Origin: Sphaerodactylus townsendi
Lineage: Eukaryota
DNA: 64,000 nt
Direction: 5' to 3'
Assembly (NCBI RefSeq): GCF_021028975.2
Contig: NC_059429.1
Span: 22,196,001-22,260,000 of the forward strand
The notes beneath the pieces are model-generated. The model was not told where the DNA came from, ran no database searches, and saw nothing but the letters and a program-made list of their open reading frames with translations. Positions 22,742 through 64,000 of this stretch are shown piece by piece. A program made the position numbers and the translations under genes. Positions within the stretch are counted from its first letter, which is position 1, and each line of letters begins with the position of its first letter.

Positions 22742-23182
22742 ATGTTTTCAATTGCGCTGCTCGTAGCTTCCCCTGCAAGGATGGGGGCCAGGTGCCGCTT
22801 TGCCTGAGATGTGATGGGAAGCCGGATTGCGCAGATGGCAGTGATGAGAGCAGTTGCGGTGCCGGAACTGCCTCGTGTGCACCTGGTGAATGGCAGTGTG
22901 GCGGTGGAGGCCCTTGCCTGCCCTTGGAGCAGCTCTGCGATGACTACCTGGACTGCCTGGACATTTCCTACGAACTGGCTGCGGCTTGTGAGAACCAGAC
23001 AGCCCAGGCCAAAGTGCCCCTCCCTTCCCCTGCCTGCTCTGAAGAGGAGTTCCAGTGTGCTCCAGGGGCTTACTGTTTCCCCCTGGAGTGGTGGTGTGAT
23101 GGCCATCCAGATTGTGTCAGCCAGCTGGATGAACAGAACTGCAGTTTGAATTTGCCGGCATCTTCAGTGGCAACTAAGATTG
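22742..23182 (+). CDS. CD320: CD320/Tva exon 2 encoding three LDL-receptor class A modules
   Basis: Acceptor tttctctctcggcag; modules ending CDGKPDCADGSDESSC, CDDYLDCLDISYELAAAC and CDGHPDCVSQLDEQNC; 441 nt, phase 1-1. The donor GTGGGG is weak, so the 3' end is less sure. Position next to NDUFA7 matches CD320. Confidence 0.85.
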
Positions 23183-23578
23183 GTGGGGCAAATGGCTGGC
23201 TGTTTTGGGGGAAGGGGCAGGGAGGTGTTCGGTGTGGGGGTCTTGGCTCATACTGCTGCAGTTTTTTTGCCTGTTCCAGAATGCCTTTGCTTTTTGTCTG
23301 CTCTGTACAGCTGCATCAGCCCTTCCCTTGAGGTACATCTTCCTTACATTTGGTTCTGTTGCCCTTCTTGGTGCCATCCTCTTTTCTCTGAGGCCCAGTT
23401 TACACATGCAAGAGGAACGATGTGGTAGAACAGACTGTCCTGCTTTGGATCACTGGTGGAAGATCACATGGTGGCACACTTCTGAATGTAGGAAGCTCCC
23501 TGTGCTTAGAAACCCAGCAGAGCAAGCAAAGAGATTTGGTAGAGCCATTCCCCTTGCTGTGATAGTCTGCTGTGATAG

Positions 23579-33000: not shown

Positions 33001-33301
33001 GAAGGCTCTCCTTTCTGAAATAGCTCCTCGACAAAAGGTTAACTCCATAATCTTATTAACGTTTTAAGAAGCTGCCGTCCAGTCTCTCCATCACAAGTTC
33101 CATGGCTTGGTTTGAGAAGCAGCCGGCTCGGGCATTTGCCAGCTGGCTGGGCATGCCCTTGCCAGCCCTTAGAGAACTTCTGGGATTCTTCTCCACGAAC
33201 ATACATCTCACGGGAACAGAATAGTGATTCTCCTGAACTGACCCCCACCCCAACTGGTGGCAGCAGCAGAAGGACTATTGGGTGAGGCAGCACTAGGTAC
33301 C

Positions 33302-34552
33302 ATGAGGCAAGCCACGAAGAGGCGCTTGAGCCTCTCGGCCAACATGAAAATCGGGGACATTTGCAAAGGTTGCCAGGACCCCGACAAGGAGGAAGTGTAC
33401 ATCCCCTTTGCCCAGGAACATCTGGTGAAGCGATGGGGTTCGCTAACCAACTTAGCCGATCAGAAGCAGGAGGGAATCAACATCCCACCCCGGCGGAACC
33501 GATTTGTCCTCAACCTCAACGTTGGGGGGAAATGTTTCCAGGTCGCCTGTAAGATGGCTGCTAAGTACCCAAAGACAAGGATTGGCCAGCTGGCCCTGTC
33601 CAAGGACCATACGAAGAAAATGGAACTTTGCGACGACTACTCGGTGCTGAAGAATGAATACTTCTTTGACCGTGACCCGCTCATGTTCCACTACGTCTTC
33701 CACTTCTACCGTAGTGGGGTTATGTGGGTCCTGGAAGAGTTCTGCCCATCCAACTTCGTCGACGAGATCGAGTACTGGGGCATCCACATCAAATACACCC
33801 AGAGGTGCTGCCGCATCCTCTTCGAGGAGAAACAGGACGAGCTGGCCGACTACCTCAAAATCCAACGGGAGTTGGAAGCGGAGCTGGAGCCGCTGAGAAA
33901 GGGGGAGCACTTTGATGGGAAATGCATGGGCAAGTTCCGCAAGGCAGTCTGGAACCTGATCGAGAACCCGTACTCCTCCATCCCTGCCAAGATCATTGCC
34001 GTCATGTCCAGCGTATTTGTCCTCATCTCCATCGTCGGGATGACACTGAGCACTGTCGAGGAGATGCAGCACAAGAGCAGCAAGAATTACTTGGAGCAAA
34101 CGGAGACCATCTGTGCCATCTTCTTCACCCTGGAGTACCTCATGCGCCTCATTTCCACCTCCAGCTTCCAGCAATTCCTGCGGGCGGCGTTCAGCGCCAT
34201 TGACCTGGTGGCCATCATGCCCTTCTATATCCAGATACTCTTTGAGAACCTGGGCGAGGGGGACACGGAGTACCACGAGGAGCTGCACAAGATGCGCAGC
34301 GTGGGCAAGCTGGGGAAGGTGCTCAAGCTGATCAAGCTGATGCGCATCTTTCGCATCCTCAAGCTGGCCCGCCACTCCACGGGCCTGAGGGCCTTCGGCT
34401 TCACCATCCGGCAGTGCTACCAGCAGGTCTGCTGCCTCTTCCTCTTCATTGCCATGGGCGTCTTCACCTTCTCTGCCCTGATGCATTCGGTGGAACACGA
34501 TGTCCCAGGCACGGACTTCACCAGCATCCCTGTGACCTGGTGGTGGGCTGCG
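33302..34552 (+). CDS. KCNV2L: KCNV2-like (Kv8.2-like) silent voltage-gated K+ channel subunit, exon 1 (T1, S1-S5, pore helix)
   Basis: accATG; T1 motifs LNLNVGG, EYFFDRDP, KYTQRCCRI; S4-S5 [29 protein letters not shown] is KCNV2-type; phase-0 donor WWWAA|GTAAGT. Confidence 0.92.
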
Positions 34553-34684
34553 GTAAGTCATTGTCCCCTCTTTTTATCTACGTACATCTAATCTATTTGT
34601 GATAGACAGCAGCTCCCCAGGGCTTGGTCAGAGAAGGGCATTTCCCTTCACTTCCTCTCTGAGATAATAAAACTGCAAGGATTG

Positions 34685-36534: not shown

Positions 36535-36642
36535 CCGTGGTTGCGAACCTTTGGCACTCCAGATGTTGTGGACTACAATTCCCATCAGCCCCTGCCAGCA
36601 TGGCCAATTGGCATCTGGAGTGCCAAAGGTTCCCCACCACTG
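36535..36642. mobile_element. hAT-type MITE (internally deleted)
   Basis: Inverted termini; perfect 8-bp TSD TCCTAGCA. Confidence 0.85.
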
Positions 36643-37047: not shown

Positions 37048-37596
37048 GTCAGCCTCTCCACCGTGGGCTACGGGGACACTGTGCCGGACACTGTGCTGGG
37101 CAGGATGGTGGCCTTTGCGTGCATCTCTTTTGGCATCATCCTCAATGGGATGCCCATCTCCATCCTCTACAACAAGTTCTCTGACTATTACGCCAAGCTC
37201 AAGTCCCACGAGTCTGAGGCCACCAAGTCGCTCAAGCTGACTCGGAAGCTCCGCCTGAAGGAAAGAGCTTGGCAGAAGTTCCTGGTGAGTTGCTGCCCAG
37301 AGGACTACCTCTCCTGCCCGCCGGCAGCAGGTCACCCCAGCGGCCAACATTTTGTGCCTCAGTCTGGCCACCTGGAATACCCGGTTATCCACCAGCCACA
37401 GCACGGTCACCAGCCACTGCGTTCTGCTCCTCATTCCCCCTGTTCTCATAGCTACCGCTGTCACCACTCTTCTTCCCCCTACAGGGGTCAGCATGCCCAC
37501 CTGGCAATTCCCCCCCTGCTCCTATCACGATCTGGCTCTCCTACCCCTCAGCCGTCACCCCGCCCATCGTCACAAGCAAGACACTCTGTCTTGTAA
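37048..37596 (+). CDS. KCNV2L: KCNV2-like subunit, exon 2 (selectivity filter, S6, C-terminus)
   Basis: Acceptor ttgtcctctctcag; [10 protein letters not shown] filter; S6 [21 protein letters not shown] as in KCNV2; TAA at 37594-37596; protein ~599 aa. Confidence 0.9.
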
Positions 37597-38464: not shown

Positions 38465-38872
38465 CCCCTCCTCTTGCATGCCACCCCTCACTCACTCCCC
38501 TCCCTTGCATGCCACCCCTCTCCCTTTCCTCCCTCCACCAGGGTGGGTGGGCCAGGTCTAGATGCCAAACCCTCTCCCCTCCCCTGCATGCCACTCCTCA
38601 CTCCCTCCCTTGCATGCCACCCCTCCCCCTCCCACCACTAGGGTGGGTGGGCCAGGTCCAGATGTCATCCCCCTCCCCTCCCTTGCATGCCACCCCTCCC
38701 TCCCTTGCATGCTACCCCTCACTCACTCCCCTCCCTTATTCCCTTTCCCTTGCATGCCACCCCTCCCCCTCCCTCCCCTCCACTAGGGTGGGTGGGCCAT
38801 GTCCAGATGCCGGGGCCCCTCCCCCTCCCTTGCATGCCACCCCTCACTCCCTCCCCTCCCTCACTTCCCCCC
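38465..38872. repeat. C-rich compound minisatellite
   Basis: About eight copies of ccttgcatgccacccctc and three copies of ccac(c/t)agggtgggtgggcca(g/t)gt(c)cagatg. Confidence 0.9.
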
Positions 38873-39121
38873 TAATTATTTGATTAGGGTATCATAAGCT
38901 GTTACGCTTCCTGTCCCCCTTGACTTAAATCCGAGTCACCAGGTAACTAGTCCGCCTGCAAAGTATATGCTCCTGATCTTCAACTGAACCCGAGCCTTCC
39001 CTGTAACTCTGGGCAATTAGGGGCAATGTATTATATGAATTCTTAATTGTGGCCTGTAGGTCAATGCAGCTGAGTTGTTCAATGCTAGCAGAATACCTTT
39101 TAATTAATTCAACTTAAAACT

Positions 39122-43399: not shown

Positions 43400-44145
43400 C
43401 CTCCAGTGGAATCTACCCCCAAACAGCATCACTTTCAATGGTGTTTAAACTAGGGAGCCAAAATTCTTCTTTTAAATCAGGGGTAGGGAACCTGCGGATT
43501 TCCAGATGTTCAGGAACTACAATTCCCATCAGCCTCTATCAGCATGGCCAATTGGCCATGCTGGTTGAAAGCTGATAGAGGCTGGATTGTAATTCCTATC
43601 TAGGCACCGATTCCTATTTAAATCCACCTTAAAGGGAGGATCTGGGGTCCCCAGTTAAAACAACATTGAAAGTGATGCTGTTTTGGGGTGCAACAGCATC
43701 ACTTTCAATGTTTAAACTGAGGACCTCACATTCTCCCTTAAAGTCCATGCCAAAGGGGGTGGATTTAAAAGGAGAATCTGGGGAAATTTGGGGGGTGCCT
43801 GCTGTCAGGGGTGCAATTGTTAAGCTAGCAGCACCAAACTTTCAGGGGATCTTTAGGAGACTCTCCTGGTGATACCAGCCACGTTTGGTGAAGTTTGGTT
43901 CAGGGGGTCCAAAGTTATGGCCCCTCAAAGGTGTAGCCCCCATCTCCTATTAGCTCCCATTGGAAACAATGGGGGATGGGGCACCCCTTTTGGGAGTCCA
44001 TAACTTTGGACCCCCTGAACCAAACCTTACCAAATCTGGGTGGTATCATCAGGAGGGTCATCTGAAAAAATCCCTGAAATTTTGGTGTTGCTAGTCTAAA
44101 AACTGTGCCCCCTGCAGGCCAAAAACGGAAAAAACACTTTAAAAT
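43400..44145. mobile_element. Interspersed repeat, internal part of a probable non-autonomous DNA transposon, with a partial MITE at 43478-43597
   Basis: 43640-44125 is closely similar to 59797-60390. Confidence 0.7.
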
Positions 44146-44586: not shown

Positions 44587-44734
44587 CAGGGGTAGGGAAC
44601 CTGCGGCTCTCCAGATGTTCAGGAACTACAATTCCCATCAGCCTCTGTCAGCATGGCCAATTGGCCATGCTGGTAGGGGCTGATGGGAATTGTAGTTCCT
44701 GAACATCTGGAGAGCCGCAGGTTCCCTACCCCTG
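44587..44734. mobile_element. 148-bp palindromic hAT MITE
   Basis: Near-perfect palindrome; 8-bp TSD ATCTATAT; identical by eye to 48123-48270. Confidence 0.93.
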
Positions 44735-45806: not shown

Positions 45807-46985
45807 CTATGGCTGAACTACTTTGTGAATTCCTTCATGCCTCCTTAAGGTGCCTGATTCAGCAAAAGACTGGCCACAGTAGGCACAAGAGTAAGGTTTT
45901 TCTCCTGTATGGGTACGCTGATGGCGGCGCAGTGAAGCAAGGCGCGCAAAGGCACTGCCACATTCTTTGCAGAGGAAAGGGCGCTCACCAGTGTGTGTCT
46001 GCTGATGCTTTTTCAGCCTCGCCAGTTGAACAAAAGTCATGCCGCATTGGTGACACTGGTTCGGCTTTTCCTTTTTGTGGCTTAGCTTGTGCCTGGAAAG
46101 CAAACTGGCTTTACTAAAAACTTTGCAGCATACTGGGCATTGGTAGTGCTTGGAACTACCTTCTCTGGGGTTTCGGGTGGCACCGCCCACCTGCCCAGGG
46201 TTGCGGCTTTGAACCTGGCTCTGATACAGAACAGACCAAGGGTTCTTGACATTAGCATCTCCCAGAACAACACCGGAGCGACTGATCTTGTGAAAGCTGT
46301 GGAGATGTCTCCAGACATCAGCGGTGCGGATGAAACCCTTGTCACATTCTGGGCACTTGTGTGGTCTGTCTGTGGAATGGGTCAGTCGGTGCATCCGTAA
46401 GTTAGCGGAGCGGAAAAACTCTTTGCCACAGACTGGGCACCAATACGAACATCCAGCGGCGTATTTCTTTTTGTGCTCCTCTAACCGACAGAGGTCTTGG
46501 AATGATTTCCCACACCTCTCACAGTGGTAAGGCAAAACTTGGCTCAGCCGAGGCGGCAGATTCTCATCATCAAGAGAGTCAACAAGGATGATGAAGTTCT
46601 CCTCCTCTTCCTTCAGACCTCCCTGAAGATGTGAGGAATGCCCAGATGACCAGAGTTCCAGATCCTTACATTCACAAAGGTAATTACAAGTGGTGCTTGG
46701 GACATAGACACCATTTCTGGCCAACCTCCATTTTCGGCAGTAGGTTGACATTTTTGCAGATGTGCTCACAGAATTTTCATCTTCTGAACAGGGCAGAACT
46801 AGAGGAAGATCCGGTTCATCTGAAGATGCAGGAAGGATGCCACTGAGATTGGAAGGGGGCGGGTTGACTTCCTCTATCTCTAGCAGTAGGATGGGCTTAT
46901 CATTTATACAATCAGCAGCTGAATTGGTTATTGTGGTACTGCAGGCATCCTTTTCAGCCACACGAACCCCATACATTTCCATCAT
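45807..46985 (-). CDS. C2H2 zinc-finger protein (392 aa; 3+4 fingers; no KRAB or SCAN domain visible)
   Basis: Six intact fingers plus one degenerate finger (HKKKY); linkers TGERPF, TGEKPY and STDRPH; acceptor ttctttccatag at 47038; in-frame TGA 9 nt before the ATG; AATAAA (-) at 45258-45263. Confidence 0.9.
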   Translation of the reverse strand: MMEMYGVRVAEKDACSTTITNSAADCINDKPILLLEIEEVNPPPSNLSGILPASSDEPDLPLVLPCSEDENSVSTSAKMSTYCRKWRLARNGVYVPSTTCNYLCECKDLELWSSGHSSHLQGGLKEEEENFIILVDSLDDENLPPRLSQVLPYHCERCGKSFQDLCRLEEHKKKYAAGCSYWCPVCGKEFFRSANLRMHRLTHSTDRPHKCPECDKGFIRTADVWRHLHSFHKISRSGVVLGDANVKNPWSVLYQSQVQSRNPGQVGGATRNPREGSSKHYQCPVCCKVFSKASLLSRHKLSHKKEKPNQCHQCGMTFVQLARLKKHQQTHTGERPFLCKECGSAFARLASLRRHQRTHTGEKPYSCAYCGQSFAESGTLRRHEGIHKVVQP

Positions 46986-47990: not shown

Positions 47991-48122
47991 TTTTACTTTT
48001 TATTTTGTGATAGCCACTAGCCATGGTGGCTAAAGGCAATCTTTCCCCTGAAGGCCAATGTTAAGTAGTGATGTTAGGGGAAGGTTATGACCTCTATTGT
48101 GCTGTTTGTTGTTCCTCCAGGG

Positions 48123-48270
48123 CAGGGGTAGGGAACCTGCGGCTCTCCAGATGTTCAGGAACTACAATTCCCATCAGCCTCTGTCAGCATGGCCAATTGG
48201 CCATGCTGGTAGGGGCTGATGGGAATTGTAGTTCCTGAACATCTGGAGAGCCGCAGGTTCCCTACCCCTG
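48123..48270. mobile_element. 148-bp palindromic hAT MITE
   Basis: 8-bp TSD CTCCAGGG; identical by eye to 44587-44734. Confidence 0.93.
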
Positions 48271-48744
48271 CTCCAGGGCAACTGATTGGCTTCAGGAAGA
48301 AAAAAGAAGCTGGTCAAAACAAGCTACAGATCTGATCCAACAGGGCTCTTCTTATCAGCACAGTTGTCAACCACCTGTAGGAAAAATTGACCCTGTGCAT
48401 TAAATACAGGTTTATTTCCATCCCATGAACTGCTTTAGCTGCACATTTCTACACACTAAGCTTCTATTAAAGGGGCAACACTACTACAGGCAAAGAAGTT
48501 GAACCCAGCAATATTTACTCAACATTCATCCTAAGCAAAATTTAACAGTGCGGTCCTATGCAGTTACTCTAATCTATCAAAAATATCATGTGAAAAGCAT
48601 GAAAAAGAAAACAAAACTGAATCCCAAGGTGTTGATATTCTGAAAGTGTCTCAGAAATCAGCAGAGCATGCAGCTCAATGCTGTGGTCTAGCTAAGAGGG
48701 CTACCGTATCCCTCCTCTTGACCACTACTCACAACGTTCTTAGA

Positions 48745-50718: not shown

Positions 50719-50863
50719 CTGCGGTGGCGAACCTTTGGCACTCCAGATGTTATGGACTATAATTCCCATCAGCCCTTCCAGCATGGCCAATTGGCCATGT
50801 TGGAAGGGGCTGATGGGAATTGTAGTCCATAACATCTGGAGTGCCAAAGGTTCGCCACCACGG
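50719..50863. mobile_element. Palindromic hAT MITE
   Basis: Inverted arms; perfect 8-bp TSD CCTTACAG. Confidence 0.9.
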
Positions 50864-55729: not shown

Positions 55730-55878
55730 GCAGGGGTCTGCAACCTGCGGCTCTCCAGATGTTAATGGACTACAATTCCCATCAGCCCTTGCCCGCATGG
55801 TCAATTGGCCATGCGGGCAGGGGCTGACGGGATTTGTAGTCCATGAGCATCTGGAGAGCCGCAGGTTGCAGATCCCTG
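55730..55878. mobile_element. Palindromic hAT MITE
   Basis: caggggtctgcaacctgcggctctccagatg ... catctggagagccgcaggttgcagatccctg. Confidence 0.85.
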
Positions 55879-56249
55879 CGAGTCATGACCTTTTCAAGCT
55901 GCCTTGAGCAACGAAGAAAAGTAGCATATATTTTAATAAAGTCAACCCAGAGCTCTCCCCACCTGTAGCCCATCCTGTCCCCTTTCTCAGCAGAAGGAAA
56001 CTGTTCCACAGGGGAGAATGTCTGCCAGTGCAGCGTTTCTCCCCCACTGTCCGACTCACCACGCTCGCTTACATCCCCTCTTCTGTTGAATGCATTTTTA
56101 TTCAGCCCTCCCTCCCTCCCTCCCTCCAAGAAGCACCCTGTTCTCCTTTCCCCGTTTTACCTTCACAACAGTCCTGCAGTAGAAGACACTGAGGGGAAAA
56201 TGACTGAACTACGGGAGACCAACCCAACATTTATGGCCCGCCCCTTTCT

Positions 56250-57900
56250 GCCCTCAGGACGAACTCCAACCCAGCAGACCCGCCGACCCCGACAGTTGCC
56301 GCTTCTCCCCATTCCCCGGCTCCGACCCGGCCCTTTTTCTTTGGTGGGGGGGGGGCGCGCCAGTTTTCTCAACCCCCTCCTCGCGCTCCTTGCTCCGGGG
56401 CGTCAAGCAGTCGACCTCTTTCCCCACCTCCCCACCAGGCTCCCTTGGGCGACCGCCTGTGTGCTGCTCCCCACAGTTCTAAGGGGGCTGCCAGCTATCA
56501 ATGGTGCTCGCCCGCTGAACCTCCCCTCGGGGGCTCATTGTCTCCCGCAGCCTCCTGCGCATACCTGGTTTCAGCACGCGAGTCTTGAGTGCAAGAGGTG
56601 CCCAGGCGAGCGCAAAGCCCCGCGCGACCCGCCCTTGTGCCCACCCGCACCGGCGCGTCCAGGTGCTTCTGGGCAGAAAGGGCAGGTGGGCCGTCCCATC
56701 TCCGTCCAAGGGCGTGTCCACCCCTCCATGGGCAATCAGCCGTTCGGGTTGCCCTTGAAGCCACGCTCCCTGGTCCGCGGAATGAGAAGATTCGGCTCTG
56801 GGGAGGCCTGGTCTGCAACCGGGGGCGTATCTACGAAAAATGGAGGGGGAGGGGAAGCTGAGTTTTGCGCTTTTATAGTTATAGAACTATAGTTATAATT
56901 CTCATCGTGATAACCATTGTTATAACGTTCTCAGACAGCTGACACTGGCAGCAGCCCCTTCCCCGGTTCCACCCCCCCCCCCCCAAGGCCCCCTGAGCCT
57001 GCTGTGGTTAGCAGGGCCGTTGCGATCGGTATATCGATCGCTATACCGATCGGTATAATGATCGCTATACCGATCGGTATATCGATCGTTATACCGATAG
57101 ATATAACGATCGATATACTGATCAGTATAACGATCGATATAACGATCGGTATAGCGATCATTATACCGATCGGTATAGCGATCGATATAACGATCGTTAT
57201 ACTGATCGCAACGGCCCTGCTAACCACGGAAGGCTGAGGGGGCCGTGGTCCGGGGGAGGGGCGCTGGGAAAGGGGTCGGCTCTCCCGAGCACTGTGGGTT
57301 GGGTGCTGGGCGCCGATTGGCCGACGCGCGGGCATTGGCGCAGGAAGCCGCCCGGTGGTTGCCTGAGGCGCGCGGCGCCCTGCTCGGGGCCAGGGGGGCC
57401 GGCTGCTGGAGCTCAGAAGAGCGCGAGGGGAGCGGGGCGCCGGGCGCGCCTGCAGCGGGGCCGAGGGCAGAGGGGTTCGCGCACGGGCGGCGGGGGAGGT
57501 GGGCTCCCGGGCAGAGCGGGAGGGAGGGAGGGAGGCCCGCGGAGGTGGCGGCGCTGCGTCCTGGCCGAGCTGAACTTGAACTCTGGCCCCGCCAGAAGGG
57601 AGGGCAAGATCGCCGCCGCCGCTGGGCTCGGGCTGGCGGGATCCTAGCGCCGTTGCAGCCTGGCAGGGGGAGAGCCCCCAGGAAGCCTTGCAGAGCGCCA
57701 GGGAGGCGGGCGGAGCGGGGGGCTCGTGAATGGGGGCCAAGGTTGGCAGACGGGTGGTCACCGGGCAAGAGGGAGGGGTCGCCCGGCTTGCAGGAGGCGT
57801 GGGGTGAACTGGCCCCAGAGAGGGGGGAAGATGGGCCAAGGGGATGGAGGAGAAACCCTGCCGACTGTGTGCAAGGGGGCAGCCAGACATCTGGCTTGGT
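56250..57900. promoter_or_regulatory. CpG island, probable promoter of the minus-strand ZNF gene
   Basis: Very high GC and CpG content; ATTGG boxes at 57316 and 57334; minus-strand donors CAG|GTATGC at 56564 and GTG|GTGAGT at 56059. Confidence 0.6.
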
Positions 57901-58446
57901 GCAGCGGCTACTAGAGCGCCTGGCTAGCTAGGATCTGAGTTCAGATGCCCCACCCCACGTGGGGCTTGCAAGGGTGAGTCTGGGTCAGGCCTCCTCTCTC
58001 CGTCTAACCAGCCCCACAGAATAAAACAGGAGTCCAGTGGCACCCGAAAGGCTGACTGCATTTATTCCAGCATCAGCCGCTGCTGGCTTCCTGAGATGCA
58101 CTGAATTTTTTAAAAAGGGGGAGGGGGTTAACTCTTTGGGGCCAGCCCAAAACAAGAGCTGATTGGGTCAGATGTGAGACCCTCTCCACTATCTACTGGA
58201 CTTCCCCTCTGGTGCCTCTGCTGATCTGAAACTTCCTGATGGTTAGTCTCTAACAGGTTTGTTTTATTCTGCTGCTTGTCTCCAGCTGAGCTGCCTCATA
58301 GGTTTGTTGTGAGGCTAAAAGGGGGGACGGAGAACCAGGTGTGCCCGGTTCCCCATTTCCACCGAGAGATGTCCACTTCAAGAGGACATGGGGACAACTG
58401 GGCCACTCCGGGGGCATGTGGTGGGCCCAGATGAAACTGTTCTGGG
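56895..58446 (+). repeat. Local segmental duplication, copy A
   Basis: Colinear with 62256-64000 from ataattctcat to cccagatgaaactgttctggg; may extend further because copy B runs off the window. Confidence 0.93.
56983..57248. repeat. Fold-back A: 40-bp inverted arms enclosing a 12-bp palindromic array
   Basis: Sixteen CGATCG-type cores alternate with 15 NTATAN spacers (57023-57208); arms 56983-57022 and 57209-57248 are complementary with 4 mismatches. Confidence 0.95.
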
Positions 58447-60850: not shown

Positions 60851-61108
60851 TTTGGTGCACACAACAACACGCACTGGGATCTAACTTCAATGCAAGAGAA
60901 AGCATTGATATAATAAGAAATAAGTAATGTTGAGACATTACTTAACATTAATATATATTAGAGATGGAACAGGCATTTGGTGCACATGACAACACGCACT
61001 GGGATCTAACTTCAATGCTGTATGGAGTGATCCTTTGATAGATTTAGAGATAAGTAATGTTGAGACATTCCTCAACATTAATATATGTTAGAGCTGTAAC
61101 AGGCATTT
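60851..61108 (+). repeat. Two-copy ~130-bp tandem duplication
   Basis: tttggtgcaca...caacacgcactgggatctaacttcaatgc...taagtaatgttgagacatt...aacaggcattt at 60851-60975 and 60976-61108. Confidence 0.9.
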
Positions 61109-62255
61109 CTCCCTCACAGCTGATGGGTTCCTGTTCCTGGGAATGTATTTAAGTCATGAAGATTCTGCTGCCTTACTTACACTTTAGTGGCCTCTACACA
61201 GCACTCAAAGGAAAAGATTTCACATTACCAATATTTAATGACCTTTCCACTGGAAGCAATTACTTATTACCAATCGGTACATAAAGCCCACATTTTCTGG
61301 TTAAAAAATGGCTTATATGTATTTACAGCCAAAATAGCATTATTTTTGTCAGCGACAAGATATGTCCAGAAACCTCCTGGCCGTTCTACGGTAAGAATTC
61401 ATGCAAAAAAGCTTGCAGAGGTGTGTGTTATACTGACCCCAGAAGAAAAACCCCCGTTATGTTTTTTTCTGGTCCTCTCAACCGTTGAGTTCCTAGCGGA
61501 GAACACCCGTGCGACGCATCAAAATACAGGAACCACCATCACTTACCCCATTCTGTGCAGACGGGACACGGACAAAGCCAGATCTTCTTCTGTTTGCTGG
61601 GAATCTCTCTGGAACAGGTCTCAGCTGCAGAAGCCTCCTTTCCTTTTCCTCCTAAAAACACAAGGCCAAGGTGAAGGTGGCTAGAGATACTCTGGAAAAC
61701 TCCCCCCCCACCCCACCAGCATGTCCTTCTCTGGTTACTCTAGCCCAGGGATCTGCAACCTGTGGCTCTCTCTCCAGATGTTCATGGACTACAATTCCCA
61801 TTAGCCCCTGCCAGCATGGCCAATTGGTGCCACTGACCCCCCCCGGCCCGGAGAACAGGGCTGCTGCTTGGGGGGCTGGACTCGGGACGACATGCTGCTT
61901 TTCTCCCCCAAACGCCTCCCCCACCTGGCCTGGGTCCCCCGGGACCCCTGCCCCCCCACGTCCCTCCACCAGACCAGGCCACCCTGAAGGCCGTCTTCGC
62001 ACAAGACCGCAGGTGGATGTGATGGGGTGATTCCGCTAACTTCCCAAGCCTCGTTGAGCTGGCAGCCAGTTTGGCGATGGAGCCCAGAGCCCAGGGTGGC
62101 CTTTCCCAGGCGCCCCCTTCGTACGAGGCCGCACGTCCAGGTTGTGGCGTGTCATGGGAGTCTCTTTGGGCAGGGGGGGGCCGCTGCTGCCCTCCAGTGG
62201 CCAAAGTCATGAATGACAAGGGCCAACCTCCACCTCCCCTTGCATTTCTCAGGTG

Positions 62256-64000
62256 ATAATTCTCATGGTTTTAACCATTGTTATAAGGTTCTCAGACAGT
62301 GGATACTGTGCTGACATTGGCAGCAGCAGCAGCCCCTTCCCCGCTCCCCCCCCCCACCACGGCCCCTTGAGCCTGCCGTGGTTAAAAGGGCTGTTGCCAC
62401 CATTATAGCGATCGTTATAGCGATCACTATAGCGATCGTTATACCGATCGTTATAGCGATCGCTATATCGATCGGTATTACGATCCGTATTACGATCGTT
62501 ATAACGATCGTTATAACAGTGGCAACGGTCCTTCCAACTACGGCAGCCTCAGGGGGCCGTGGTCCGGGGGACGGGCGCCGGGAAAGGGATCGGCTCTCCC
62601 GAGCACTGTGGGTTGGGTGCTGGGCGCCGATTGGCCGACGCGCGGGATCTGGCGCAGGAAGCTGCCCGGTGGTCGGCTGATCGCGCGGCGCCCTGCTCGG
62701 AGCCAGGGAGGCCGGCTGCGGGAGCTCAGAAGAGCGCCAGGTGAGCGGGGAGCTGGGCGCGCCTGCTCGGGGCTGAGGGCAGAGGGGCTGGCGCGTGCGA
62801 TGGGGGAGGTGCGCGTGCTCGTGGGCTCCCGGGCAGAGCGGGAGGGAGGGAGGCCCGCGGAGGCGGCGGCGGCGGCGGCGCTGCGTCCTGGCCGAGCTGA
62901 ACTTGAACTCTGACCTCGCCAGAAGGGAGGGCAAGATCGCCGCCGCCGCTGGGCTCGGGCTGGCGGGATCCTAGCGCTGCTGCAGCCTGGCAGGGGGAGA
63001 GCCCCCAGGAAGCCTTGCAGAACGCGAGGGAGGCGGAAGGGGGGGTGAATGGGGGCCAAGGTTGGCAGACGGGTGGTCACCGGGCAAGAGGGAGGGGTCG
63101 CCCGACTTGCAGGAGGCGTGGGGTGAACTGGCCCCAGAGAGGGGGGGAAATGGGCCAAGGGGATGGAGGAGAACCCCTGCCGGCTGTGTGCAAGGGGGCA
63201 GCCAGCTATCTGGCTTGGGGCAGCGGCTACTGGAGTGTCTGGCTATCTAGGATCTGAGTTCAGATGCCCCACTGTGGGGCTTGCAAGGGTGAATCTGGGT
63301 CAGGCCTCCTCTCTCAGTCTAACCAGCCGCTCAGAATAAAACAGGAGTCCAGTGGTGCCCAAAAGGCTGACTGCATTTATTCCATCATCAGCCGCCACTG
63401 GCTTCCTGAGATGCATTGAATAAAGAAAAAAAGTGTGTGTGTGTGTGTGGGGGGGGGGGGTTAACTCTTTGGGATAGCCCAAAACAAGAGCTGATTGGGT
63501 CAGTCGTTAGATGTGAGACCCTCTCCGCTATCTATCAAGGTGTGCCTATAGATGAGCTGGATGGACTTCCCCTCCGGTGCCTCTGCTGAACTGAGTTCTG
63601 GCTCCCGAAACTTCCTGATGGTTAGTCTCTAACATTTGATTAGTCTCTGTTTTATTCTGCTGCTTGTCTCCAGCTGAGTTTGTTGTGAGGCTAAAATGGG
63701 GGACGGAGAACCAGGTGTGTCTCTCTGAGCTCCTTGCAGCGAGGGTGCGCTACACAGGCCTTCAAGGGGTGCGTGTTTGGCCCAAACAGCCAGGCTGGCA
63801 TCCGGGCAATGGGGCGGAGACAGAAGACACTGGAGGCAGCCAGGACACCGAGGTCGATCAGGCTGGAAGCACTGGTGGGGCAGGTGATGAGCACGTGCCT
63901 GGTTCCCCATTCCCACCGAGAGATGTCCACTTCAAGAGGACATGGGGACAACTGGGCCACTCCGGGGGCATGTGGTGGGCCCAGATGAAACTGTTCTGGG
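62256..64000 (+). repeat. Local segmental duplication, copy B (CpG island; runs off the window)
   Basis: Colinear with 56895-58446; several indels, including ~180 extra bp near 63720-63895. Confidence 0.93.
62357..62562. repeat. Fold-back B: 44-bp inverted arms enclosing a 12-bp palindromic array
   Basis: Nine CGATCG-type cores and 10 spacers (62403-62516); arms ccacggccccttgagcc...gttgccac / gtggcaac...cctcagggggccgtgg. Confidence 0.95.

What the first reader, a model, noticed from the sequence alone, without database searches (positions are those of the whole stretch)
56983..57248. 266-nt fold-back built from a 12-bp (CGATCG NTATAN)n palindromic array inside a CpG island
Seen: 16 CGATCG-type cores at exact 12-bp spacing, separated by NTATAN spacers and enclosed by 40-bp GC-rich non-repetitive inverted arms. 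Variant units mirror across core 8: spacers 2/13, 3/12, 4/11 and 6/9 are exact reverse complements, and core 4 (TGATCG) mirrors core 12 (CGATCA). The array was therefore shaped by arm-to-arm copying, not slippage alone. Most CpGs are intact. Inference: a cruciform-forming promoter element, or a >100-bp dsRNA rod (endo-siRNA or ADAR substrate) on transcripts from the island. I do not recognise it as a named repeat or RNA family.
Basis: partly seen in the sequence, partly recalled or inferred. Interest (0 to 1): 0.85.

Follow-up and report, generated by a model that had tools for sequence, protein, structure and literature searches.

The report
Palindromic 12-bp minisatellite beside a promoter
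A real, roughly 330-bp hairpin-capable palindrome built from a 12-bp repeat lies at the edge of a duplicated CpG-island segment in a dwarf gecko genome; it looks like an unstable DNA structure that copies one arm onto the other, and nothing here shows it to be an RNA gene or a common transposon.

Summary
Sixteen CGATCG-type cores sit at exact 12-bp spacing (57023-57208). GC-rich inverted arms flank them, and the palindrome spans 56949-57282. The order of variant units is mirror-symmetric about core 8, beyond chance (5 of 3000 unit shuffles).

New points:
- A shorter paralogue lies 5.3 kb downstream (62326-62590). Both belong to a tandemly duplicated module of about 1.55 kb (56893-58446 and 62254-64000+).
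- Comparing the four arms gives 4 columns where both arms of one copy changed together and none that separate left arms from right arms. The arms therefore co-evolve.
- The inner arms and the array diverge 2-3 times faster between the paralogues than their flanks do.
- Both strands fold equally well. Rfam has no match at gathering score. No RNA run was available.
- Read depth is single-copy scale, not that of a high-copy MITE.
- The array and the module are absent next to the orthologous ZNF648 CpG island in three other gecko genomes.

Best reading: a lineage-specific palindromic minisatellite acting at the DNA level, shaped by slippage plus arm-to-arm copying. It sits between divergent CpG-island halves. 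The cruciform is predicted, not shown. An unchecked note reports the same 12-bp array at a second divergent promoter, which keeps a foldback-transposon or protein-binding reading open.

The parts
56949..57022 (.). Left arm of fold-back A. It is C-rich and non-repetitive (27% AT). It carries a C-run plus AA insertion (about 56972-56985) that the right arm lacks.
57023..57208 (.). 12-bp array A: 16 CGATCG-type cores and 15 NTATAN spacers, 60% AT, 26 of 32 core CpGs intact. It contains five perfect 16-bp palindromes; TATACCGATCGGTATA occurs three times.
57107..57112 (.). Core 8, the symmetry centre of the array (57109.5). 65 predicted pairs are centred here. 5 of the 7 mismatches lie at 57095-57124.
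57188..57199 (.). Approximate position of the extra 12-bp unit on the right side. It offsets the array centre (57109.5) from the arm centre (57115.5). In the predicted fold it forms a small local hairpin centred at 57193.5.
57209..57282 (.). Right arm of fold-back A, G-rich. The reference has A at 57230. X3, X4 and X5 contigs and copy B have C there; X1 has one contig of each letter. C restores pairing with the left arm.
62326..62402 (.). Left arm of the paralogous fold-back B
62403..62515 (.). 12-bp array B: 9.4 units, mostly TTATAG or TTATAA spacers plus a GTATTA variant. Its mirror order does not exceed chance (2114 of 3000 shuffles reach it).
62516..62590 (.). Right arm of fold-back B. The whole of B is spanned without any difference by one 385-nt short-read contig.
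56893..58446 (+). Duplicated module A: fold-back, then a G-rich CpG-island half with two reverse CCAAT boxes (ATTGG at 57316-57320 and 57334-57338), then a stretch without an ORF that ends at a consensus-like splice donor (GTGAGT at 57974-57979), then old SINE fragments. The promoter and exon reading is inference.
62254..64000 (+). Duplicated module B. It runs off the window end. Outside the fold-back most segments are 92-98% identical to A (two are 84-89%).
56200..57800 (.). CpG island. GC skew is negative to the left of the fold-back and positive to the right, so the two halves look divergently oriented. The left half is single-copy and corresponds in position to the ZNF648-upstream island of other geckos.
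45807..46985 (-). ZNF648-like coding exon (392 aa). It is the nearest gene on the minus strand, about 10 kb from the fold-back.

Best explanation
This is a lineage-specific, low-copy palindromic minisatellite that acts at the DNA level.

Its 12-bp unit consists of two 6-bp palindromes, CGATCG and a TATA-centred hexamer. A tandem array of such units is self-complementary in every register, so it can slip and fold back easily.

Inferred mechanism: hairpins form on single strands during replication or repair, or cruciforms form under negative supercoiling. These serve as templates, so changes in one arm are copied into the other (arm-to-arm conversion). Slippage adds and removes 12-bp units.

Shown here:
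- The palindrome was close to perfect when the 1.55-kb module carrying it was tandemly duplicated.
- Since then the two copies have diverged in unit number (16 versus about 9.4).
- Their inner arms and arrays have changed 2-3 times faster than the flanks.
- Some changes were concerted between the arms of a copy, while other mismatches arose in single arms.

Location: the element sits between the two oppositely skewed halves of a CpG island, 56 bp inside the left edge of DNA that other gecko families lack at this locus. I infer that it lies in the untranscribed or weakly transcribed gap between divergent promoters. Its most likely effects are structural: a cruciform-prone, break-prone site that stays unmethylated. 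A dedicated function is less likely. It may have supplied the breakpoint of the insertion or duplication, but that rests on a single case.
For: The structure is real and far beyond chance.

The mirror order of variant units in copy A exceeds shuffles: 5 of 3000 and 49-123 of 5000.

The four-arm comparison covers 58 aligned columns: 40 invariant, 12 single-arm changes, 4 columns where both arms of one copy differ from both arms of the other, and 0 columns separating left arms from right arms. My estimate for independent parallel change is about 0.1 such concerted column.

Identity between copies A and B is 92-98% in most flanking segments, but 81-84% in the inner arms and 78% with 60 gap columns in the array.

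The two strands have equal folding energy in both copies, as expected for DNA symmetry rather than a strand-specific RNA.

No Rfam family reaches its gathering score.

Short-read contigs support both copies. Depth at the fold-back is tens to hundreds, against 1e5-1e6 in neighbouring transposon-derived bins. At 57230 the depth in run X1 equals two single-copy contigs.

The island, the skew flip and the CpG retention are shown.

The orthologous ZNF648-upstream CpG island in Eublepharis, Paroedura and Gekko kuhli has no such array and no homology to the module.

Contigs of two other coded organisms cover the right arm at 90% likeness or more.
Against: No experiment or read-level data show a hairpin or cruciform in vivo.

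The central 30 nt of copy A hold 5 of the 7 mismatches, which disfavours extrusion from the centre.

Copy B shows no mirror order beyond what the unit consensus gives, so arm-to-arm copying inside the array is documented in only one copy.

Three of the four concerted columns lie in the first array unit, where orthology between copies is uncertain.

An unchecked first-reader note (s1-740236) reports a fold-back with the same 12-bp CGATCG periodicity in the DNAJC8/ATP5IF1 divergent intergenic region on another chromosome piece. A purely local, passive origin does not explain that. It needs either a duplication between the loci or mobility.

Retention of 26 of 32 and 16 of 18 core CpGs could also reflect selection on binding sites.
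Confidence: 0.55

Rival explanations
1. Relic of a non-autonomous foldback-type DNA transposon, in which the 12-bp subrepeats are multiple transposase-binding sites as in Galileo or Foldback-like elements. It would have inserted into open chromatin of CpG-island promoters and was later carried along by the segmental duplication.
For: The architecture matches in form: unique outer arm ends with internally repetitive inner arms and almost no loop. Multiple transposase THAP-domain sites lie in the tandem repeats of Galileo TIRs (PMC3688188). Foldback transposons with internally repetitive arms are known (PMC3573991 and PMC4079207). An unchecked note reports the same 12-bp array at a second, unlinked divergent promoter (s1-740236). 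The module carrying it is absent at the orthologous site in other geckos.
Against: No target-site duplication or sharp element boundary was found at either copy (by inspection). The two copies in the window share 1.5 kb of flank, so they arose by segmental duplication and not by transposition. Depth is at single-copy scale. The array pattern has no match in the viral, prokaryotic or metagenome collections. No transposase gene was seen nearby.
Confidence: 0.2
2. An array of binding sites for a dimeric DNA-binding protein, acting as a promoter-proximal or insulator-like element between divergent promoters. The palindromic 16-mers such as TATACCGATCGGTATA would be the sites, and the fold-back symmetry would be a by-product.
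For: The perfect 16-bp palindrome recurs three times in A, and related ones occur in A and B. Core CpGs are largely retained. The element lies at the point where GC skew flips in a CpG island. An unchecked note reports a second occurrence in another divergent intergenic region.
Against: Unit number and variant repertoire are not conserved between the two paralogues, and the array is the fastest-evolving part of the module. The orthologous ZNF648 promoter island of three other geckos works without it. No factor with this motif is known to me, and none could be tested with these tools. The 12-bp spacing does not match the helical repeat.
Confidence: 0.12
3. A transcribed long hairpin: a perfect-stem dsRNA of more than 100 bp that is processed into endo-siRNAs or miRNA-like RNAs, or edited by ADAR.
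For: Very stable RNA folds: -255 kcal/mol with z = -27.7 for A and -191 with z = -19 for B. Sub-threshold matches to generic miRNA-precursor models, best 76.7 bits against a gathering score of 110.
Against: The same models match both strands about equally, and none reaches its gathering score. Fold energies of the two strands are equal, with only 5-6 G-U pairs, so there is no strand-specific signature. The fold-back lies upstream of the conserved CCAAT-box region and between oppositely skewed island halves. No RNA run holds the region. Arm mismatches accumulate at about the flank rate.
Confidence: 0.08
4. Assembly artefact: a chimeric or fold-back read was turned into a false palindrome.
For: No single short-read contig spans the whole of copy A. 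Long-read data could not be examined.
Against: Copy B is spanned exactly by an independent 385-nt short-read contig. Both arm/array junctions of A are covered by contigs from two samples. The arms are only 82% complementary and carry an indel, which is not what a read-through artefact would give. Two diverged paralogues share the structure.
Confidence: 0.03

Closest known systems
Palindromic AT-rich repeats (PATRR11, PATRR22, PATRR17) at human translocation breakpoints
   Same: A palindrome of a few hundred base pairs with essentially no spacer. It is predicted to form a hairpin or cruciform. Length changes arise by events inside the palindrome, and symmetric and asymmetric forms both exist (PMC4940405; PMC1851657). 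Here one copy has a 12-bp asymmetry, the paralogues differ in length, and the element lies 56 bp from a rearrangement boundary.
   Different: PATRR11 and PATRR22 are more than 90% AT and are not built from a short tandem unit. This array is 60% AT with 27%-AT arms, has a strict 12-bp period and is CpG-dense. No translocation or polymorphism data exist here.
Foldback-like DNA transposons with internally repetitive inverted arms (Drosophila Foldback, Galileo, Tetris)
   Same: Inverted arms made largely of short tandem subrepeats, with unique sequence at the outer ends and little or no loop. In Galileo the subrepeats carry multiple transposase-binding sites (PMC3688188; PMC3573991 and PMC4079207).
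   Different: Those elements are kilobase-scale, dispersed, and flanked by target-site duplications. Here the size is 265-334 bp, no TSD was found, and the two copies seen share their flanks. Copy number is low.
Arm-to-arm gene conversion in large genomic palindromes such as the sex-chromosome ampliconic palindromes (from my own knowledge, not tested against a paper here)
   Same: The two arms of one palindrome stay more alike than orthologous or paralogous arms, because changes are copied between arms. Here there are 4 concerted columns and 0 arm-specific columns.
   Different: Those palindromes have arms of 10 kb to over 1 Mb with a unique spacer, and they carry genes. This one is a sub-kilobase minisatellite without a spacer.

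Membership tests
PATRR-type palindrome | Several hundred bp, nearly perfect palindrome without a spacer | tested here: inconclusive
   334 bp with no unique spacer. Overall arm complementarity is 82%, 92% within the array at its best centre. Five mismatches cluster at the centre and there is a 12-bp asymmetry.
PATRR-type palindrome | More than 90% AT (PMC4940405) | tested here: not met
   The array is 60% AT and the arms are 27% AT.
PATRR-type palindrome | Allelic size polymorphism and rearrangement breakpoints inside the palindrome | not testable with these tools
   Only paralogue differences (16 versus 9.4 units) and proximity to a duplication edge were seen. No population data were available.
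Foldback / Galileo-like transposon | Long inverted arms with internal tandem subrepeats | tested here: met
   A 12-bp array fills the inner arms and unique GC-rich sequence forms the outer arms.
Foldback / Galileo-like transposon | Target-site duplication at sharp element ends | tested here: not met
   No direct repeat flanks 56949/57282 or 62326/62590. The arm ends fade into C-rich and G-rich sequence (by inspection).
Foldback / Galileo-like transposon | Dispersed copies with unrelated flanks | tested here: inconclusive
   The two copies in the window share 1.5 kb of flank, and depth is at single-copy scale. One further copy at an unlinked locus is reported only by an unchecked note (s1-740236).
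MITE | High copy number (hundreds to thousands) | tested here: not met
   Summed contig depth over the fold-back is 7-350, against 1e5-7e6 in transposon-derived bins of the same stretch. The window holds only two copies.
Rfam RNA family (miRNA precursor or other) | Score at or above the family's gathering threshold | tested here: not met
   No match at gathering score in the whole window. The best sub-threshold match is 76.7 bits against 110, and it occurs on both strands.
Minisatellite | Head-to-tail array of a 10-100 bp unit | tested here: met
   TRF reports period 12 with 15.5 copies for A and 9.4 copies for B.
CpG island | GC above about 0.55 and CpG observed/expected above about 0.6 over several hundred bp | tested here: met
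   In 56200-57800 all but the two 200-bp bins over the fold-back (56800-57199) have GC 0.63-0.78, and all but the 56800-56999 bin (0.47) have o/e of 0.56 or more. The array-bearing bin 57000-57199 has o/e 2.97 at GC 0.42.

The most novel reading that the evidence does not exclude
The fold-back is one member of a small family of elements with the same 12-bp CGATCG/TATA array. These elements home to, or are selected in, the gap between divergent CpG-island promoters in Sphaerodactylus: here beside ZNF648 and, per an unchecked note, between DNAJC8 and ATP5IF1. It would be either a promoter-targeting foldback element or a lineage-specific array that binds a protein or forms a cruciform and acts as a boundary between head-to-head genes.
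Probability: 0.15. Interest if true: 0.65.

Novelty: new variant of a known kind. Interest (0 to 1): 0.4.

Why it matters
Small palindromes are usually seen only as single snapshots. Here two paralogous copies of one palindrome allow the modes of change to be counted directly: concerted two-arm changes, single-arm decay, and gain or loss of units. The counts show that arm-to-arm copying, well known for very large palindromes, also operates on a 300-bp minisatellite. They also show that such a structure can persist in an unmethylated promoter island.

If the reported second occurrence at another divergent promoter is confirmed, the element becomes a tractable case for one of two questions: promoter-targeted insertion, or a structural DNA element between head-to-head genes. 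If it is not confirmed, this is an ordinary though neat unstable repeat.

Tried and rejected
RNA family: Rfam at gathering score gave nothing for the window. At E-value threshold only generic miRNA-hairpin models matched, on both strands and below their cut-offs.

Coding: ORFs run through the array on both strands (Ile-rich repeats). I rejected them. The ORFs through the array on the plus strand open with GTG, they occur on both strands because of the repeat, and they lie in promoter-like DNA.

Provirus or LTR reading of the two modules: rejected. I saw no recognisable retroviral coding ORF among those listed for the 3.8 kb between them; they were not searched against protein families. That stretch is largely high-copy repeats. 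No primer-binding-site-like or polypurine-like sequence was noticed by eye.

Whole-module transposon: no terminal inverted repeats or TSD for 56893-58446.

A larger decayed palindrome around the island: the self-BLAST finds inverted homology only at 56955-57275.

Foreign origin: the array pattern has no exact match in the metagenome, viral or prokaryotic genome collections.

Literature: full-text searches for the CGATCG motif with palindromic or minisatellite found only cyanobacterial HIP1 and unrelated papers.

Expression: no RNA run holds the stretch. All runs were contigs, so starts, strands and levels cannot be read.

Copy number: the binned depths initially suggested 5-11 copies. I distrust that figure, because overlapping short contigs are summed and at 57230 only two contigs are present in run X1.

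Second locus: I could not read the second locus (s1-740236), and the sequence look-up in earlier findings was blank. I did not type DNAJC8 or ATP5IF1 protein sequences from memory to fetch that locus, so that step was left out.

Gekko kuhli: an 80-nt inverted repeat next to its island (L004 2102-2527) is an unrelated MITE-like insertion.
Full report
**1. What is there**

From 57023 there are 16 hexamer cores at exact 12-bp spacing. Eleven are CGATCG, two are TGATCG, and there is one each of CGATCA, CGATAG and TGATCA. Fifteen NTATAN spacers separate them. Tandem Repeats Finder reports period 12 (15.5 copies, 78% matches) and period 24 (7.8 copies, 83%).

The consensus unit is two 6-bp palindromes in a row, so the array is self-complementary in every 6-bp register. 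This explains the many overlapping inverted pairs and the five perfect 16-bp palindromes.

GC-rich non-repetitive arms enclose the array. The innermost 19 nt are perfectly complementary. Inverted homology extends over 56955-57275 at 82%, and by alignment over 56949-57282, with a C-run insertion in the left arm.

**2. Is it more than chance?**

As a structure, clearly. The DNA fold is -141 kcal/mol against -50 +/- 4 for shuffles (z = -23), and the array pattern is never found in shuffles.

The finer claim is that the order of variant units is mirrored. It needs its own test, because any array of this unit is about 86-88% self-complementary.
- The best centre is core 8 (57109.5), with 80 of 87 pairs.
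- Shuffling the 12-mers reaches this in 5 of 3000 trials when at least 80 pairs are required.
- With a laxer statistic, 49-123 of 5000 trials reach it.

So the mirror order is real but only moderately significant.

Five of the 7 mismatches lie within 15 nt of the centre. The arms define a centre 6 bp to the right (57115.5), so the right side carries one extra unit. In the predicted fold, 65 pairs are centred on 57109.5 and 49 on 57115.5, with a small local hairpin taking up the extra 12 nt.

**3. A second copy and a duplicated module**

The array pattern and a diverged arm recur at 62378-62510. Reading that region shows a second fold-back at 62326-62590, with a 9.4-unit array.

It is part of a tandem duplication. 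56893-58446 matches 62254-64000, where the window ends, at 5.3-kb spacing.

Identity between the copies varies along the module:
- 92-98% in most flanking segments;
- 81-84% in the inner arms;
- 78% with 60 gap columns in the array.

The fold-back is therefore the fastest-evolving part of the module. Copy B shows no mirror order beyond what its consensus gives (2114 of 3000 shuffles).

**4. Arm-to-arm co-evolution**

I aligned the four arms over 58 columns: left arm of A, reverse complement of the right arm of A, and the same two for B. The result was:
- 40 invariant columns;
- 12 changes confined to one arm (A 2+2, B 3+5);
- 4 columns where both arms of A differ from both arms of B;
- no column where the left arms agree against the right arms;
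- 1 cross column and 1 other.

Two things follow. The zero arm-specific count means the inner palindrome was essentially perfect at the time of the duplication. Four concerted columns are far more than the roughly 0.1 expected if arms changed independently (my estimate from the single-arm rate).

Changes are therefore copied between arms, or pairing is selected. Three of the four concerted columns lie in the first array unit (CGATCG in A, CCACCA/CCACTG in B), where orthology is less sure. Even so, a symmetric replacement on both sides is itself an arm-to-arm event.

Single-arm changes run at about 3-9% per arm. That is of the order of the flank divergence per lineage, so perfect pairing has not been strictly maintained.

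**5. DNA or RNA?**

The two strands fold equally well as RNA: -255.2 versus -256.7 kcal/mol for A, and -191.1 versus -187.1 for B. The predicted folds contain only 5-6 G-U pairs. An RNA-level constraint on one strand would tolerate G-U on that strand only, and nothing of the kind is seen.

Rfam has no match at gathering score in the window. The sub-threshold matches are generic miRNA-hairpin models hitting both strands.

Transcription therefore remains untested.

**6. Setting**

The window is GCA_021028975.2, CM037618.2, positions 22196001-22260000. A paper gives that assembly as Sphaerodactylus townsendi (PMC11797025).

The fold-back lies in a CpG island at 56200-57800. GC skew is negative to its left and positive to its right. 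This is what two divergently oriented promoter halves would give. An inverted repeat with a C-rich left arm also contributes to it locally.

To the left, about 10 kb away on the minus strand, is a ZNF648-like coding exon. It is 66-70% identical to the gecko proteins, two of which are annotated as ZNF648 or ZNF625-like.

I fetched the ZNF648 loci of four other geckos:
- Non-coding homology is collinear with the window up to about 55300.
- It is followed by a CpG island whose skew is positive in the direction of ZNF648. That island corresponds in position to the single-copy left half here.
- In Eublepharis, Paroedura and Gekko kuhli, at least 2 kb beyond that island is available. It contains no CGATCG array, no comparable palindrome, and no homology to 56893-58446.
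- The Heteronotia locus ends at the island and is uninformative.

The module with its fold-back is thus an addition in the Sphaerodactylus lineage. The fold-back begins only 56 bp inside the module's left edge.

To the right of the fold-back, both copies conserve a GC-rich stretch with reverse CCAAT boxes (57316-57320, plus 57334-57338 in A only), a region without an ORF, and a consensus-like splice donor at 57974-57979. I read this as a plus-strand promoter and non-coding first exon. That reading is inference only.

**7. Copy number and other samples**

Summed contig depth over the fold-back is 7-350 depending on the run. Neighbouring transposon-derived bins reach 1e5-7e6. At 57230, run X1 shows exactly two contigs of single-copy depth, one with the reference A and one with C, which is the base in copy B. 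This is not a high-copy MITE or satellite.

A 385-nt contig of X1 spans copy B without any difference. Contigs at 56873-57059 (X1) and 57062-57295 (X3) cover both junctions of copy A. Runs of two other coded organisms have contigs over the right arm at 90% likeness or more, all with C at 57230. At least that arm is therefore shared with relatives.

**8. The lead that complicates the picture**

Earlier notes of this scan include an unchecked first-reader finding, s1-740236: a fold-back palindrome with a 12-bp-periodic CGATCG array in the DNAJC8/ATP5IF1 divergent intergenic region, on another piece of the same genome.

I could not read that locus. The look-up by sequence was blank.

Either the module here is a segmental duplicate of part of that region, or the fold-back is or was mobile, or it is selected at such sites. 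This is why I keep the transposon and binding-array readings at 0.20 and 0.12.

**9. Comparison with known kinds**

PATRRs share the size, the lack of a spacer, the structure-prone nature and internal length change. PATRR11 and PATRR22, however, are more than 90% AT and are not periodic (PMC4940405). The array here is 60% AT and the arms 27% AT, so it is not a PATRR.

Foldback-like transposons share the arm architecture, and in Galileo the subrepeats bind the transposase (PMC3688188). The defining TSDs and dispersed copies were not found here.

The arm-to-arm conversion resembles that of very large palindromes, at a scale about a thousand times smaller. That comparison is from my own knowledge.

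**10. Verdict**

The functional inferences are not supported by anything I could test. The dsRNA reading is the weakest. The cruciform reading is plausible but unproven.

I rate it a new variant of a known kind: a palindromic, fold-back minisatellite. Interest is moderate (0.4). It would rise if the second locus is confirmed as an independent insertion.

Noticed in passing
window 55730-55879; also 48122-48271, 44587-44734, 50730-50852, 61746-61827, 36539-36612, 43478-43561: A 150-nt self-complementary, MITE-like element (90.7% self-inverted) with several copies in the window. Contig depth over the 61746-61827 copy is extremely high (about 3e6), so this is a true high-copy fold-back repeat. It is unrelated to the CGATCG array.
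   Followed up: partly
window 56873-56899: A patch of spacer-like hexamers without CGATCG cores (TTATAG TTATAG AA CTATAG TTATAA) lies exactly at the left edge of the homology between modules A and B (56893). It may be a remnant of the array or a templated insertion at the rearrangement junction.
   Followed up: no
window 56893-58446 and 62254-64000: A tandem duplication with 5.3-kb spacing of a module of about 1.55 kb (fold-back, G-rich CpG-island half, ORF-free exon-like stretch, old SINE fragments). Copy B has extra insertions (265 gap columns around 58111-58340) and runs off the window, so further copies may follow.
   Followed up: partly
window 57230: The reference has A. X3, X4 and X5 contigs and copy B have C; X1 has one contig of each letter. 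C pairs with the left arm, so the reference allele is a derived single-arm mismatch or an error.
   Followed up: partly
window 45807-46985 (-), 33257-34591 and 37063-37596 (+), 22792-23331 (+): A ZNF648-like single-exon gene; two ORFs of a voltage-gated potassium channel (called in the source annotation as a 599-aa product with BTB_2 and Ion_trans domains); and an ORF rich in spaced cysteines and acidic residues that looks like LDL-receptor class A repeats by eye (not searched against protein families).
   Followed up: partly
window 38465-38880 and 60851-61108: A C-rich tandem repeat with nested periods of 22-26, 100 and 145 bp inside a region of GC skew -0.38, and a 130-bp two-copy tandem repeat.
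   Followed up: no
L004 2102-2527 (Gekko kuhli, upstream of ZNF648): An inverted repeat with 80-nt arms (76% complementary, 266 nt apart) abuts the orthologous CpG island. It is AT-rich, MITE-like and unrelated in sequence to the fold-back studied here.
   Followed up: partly
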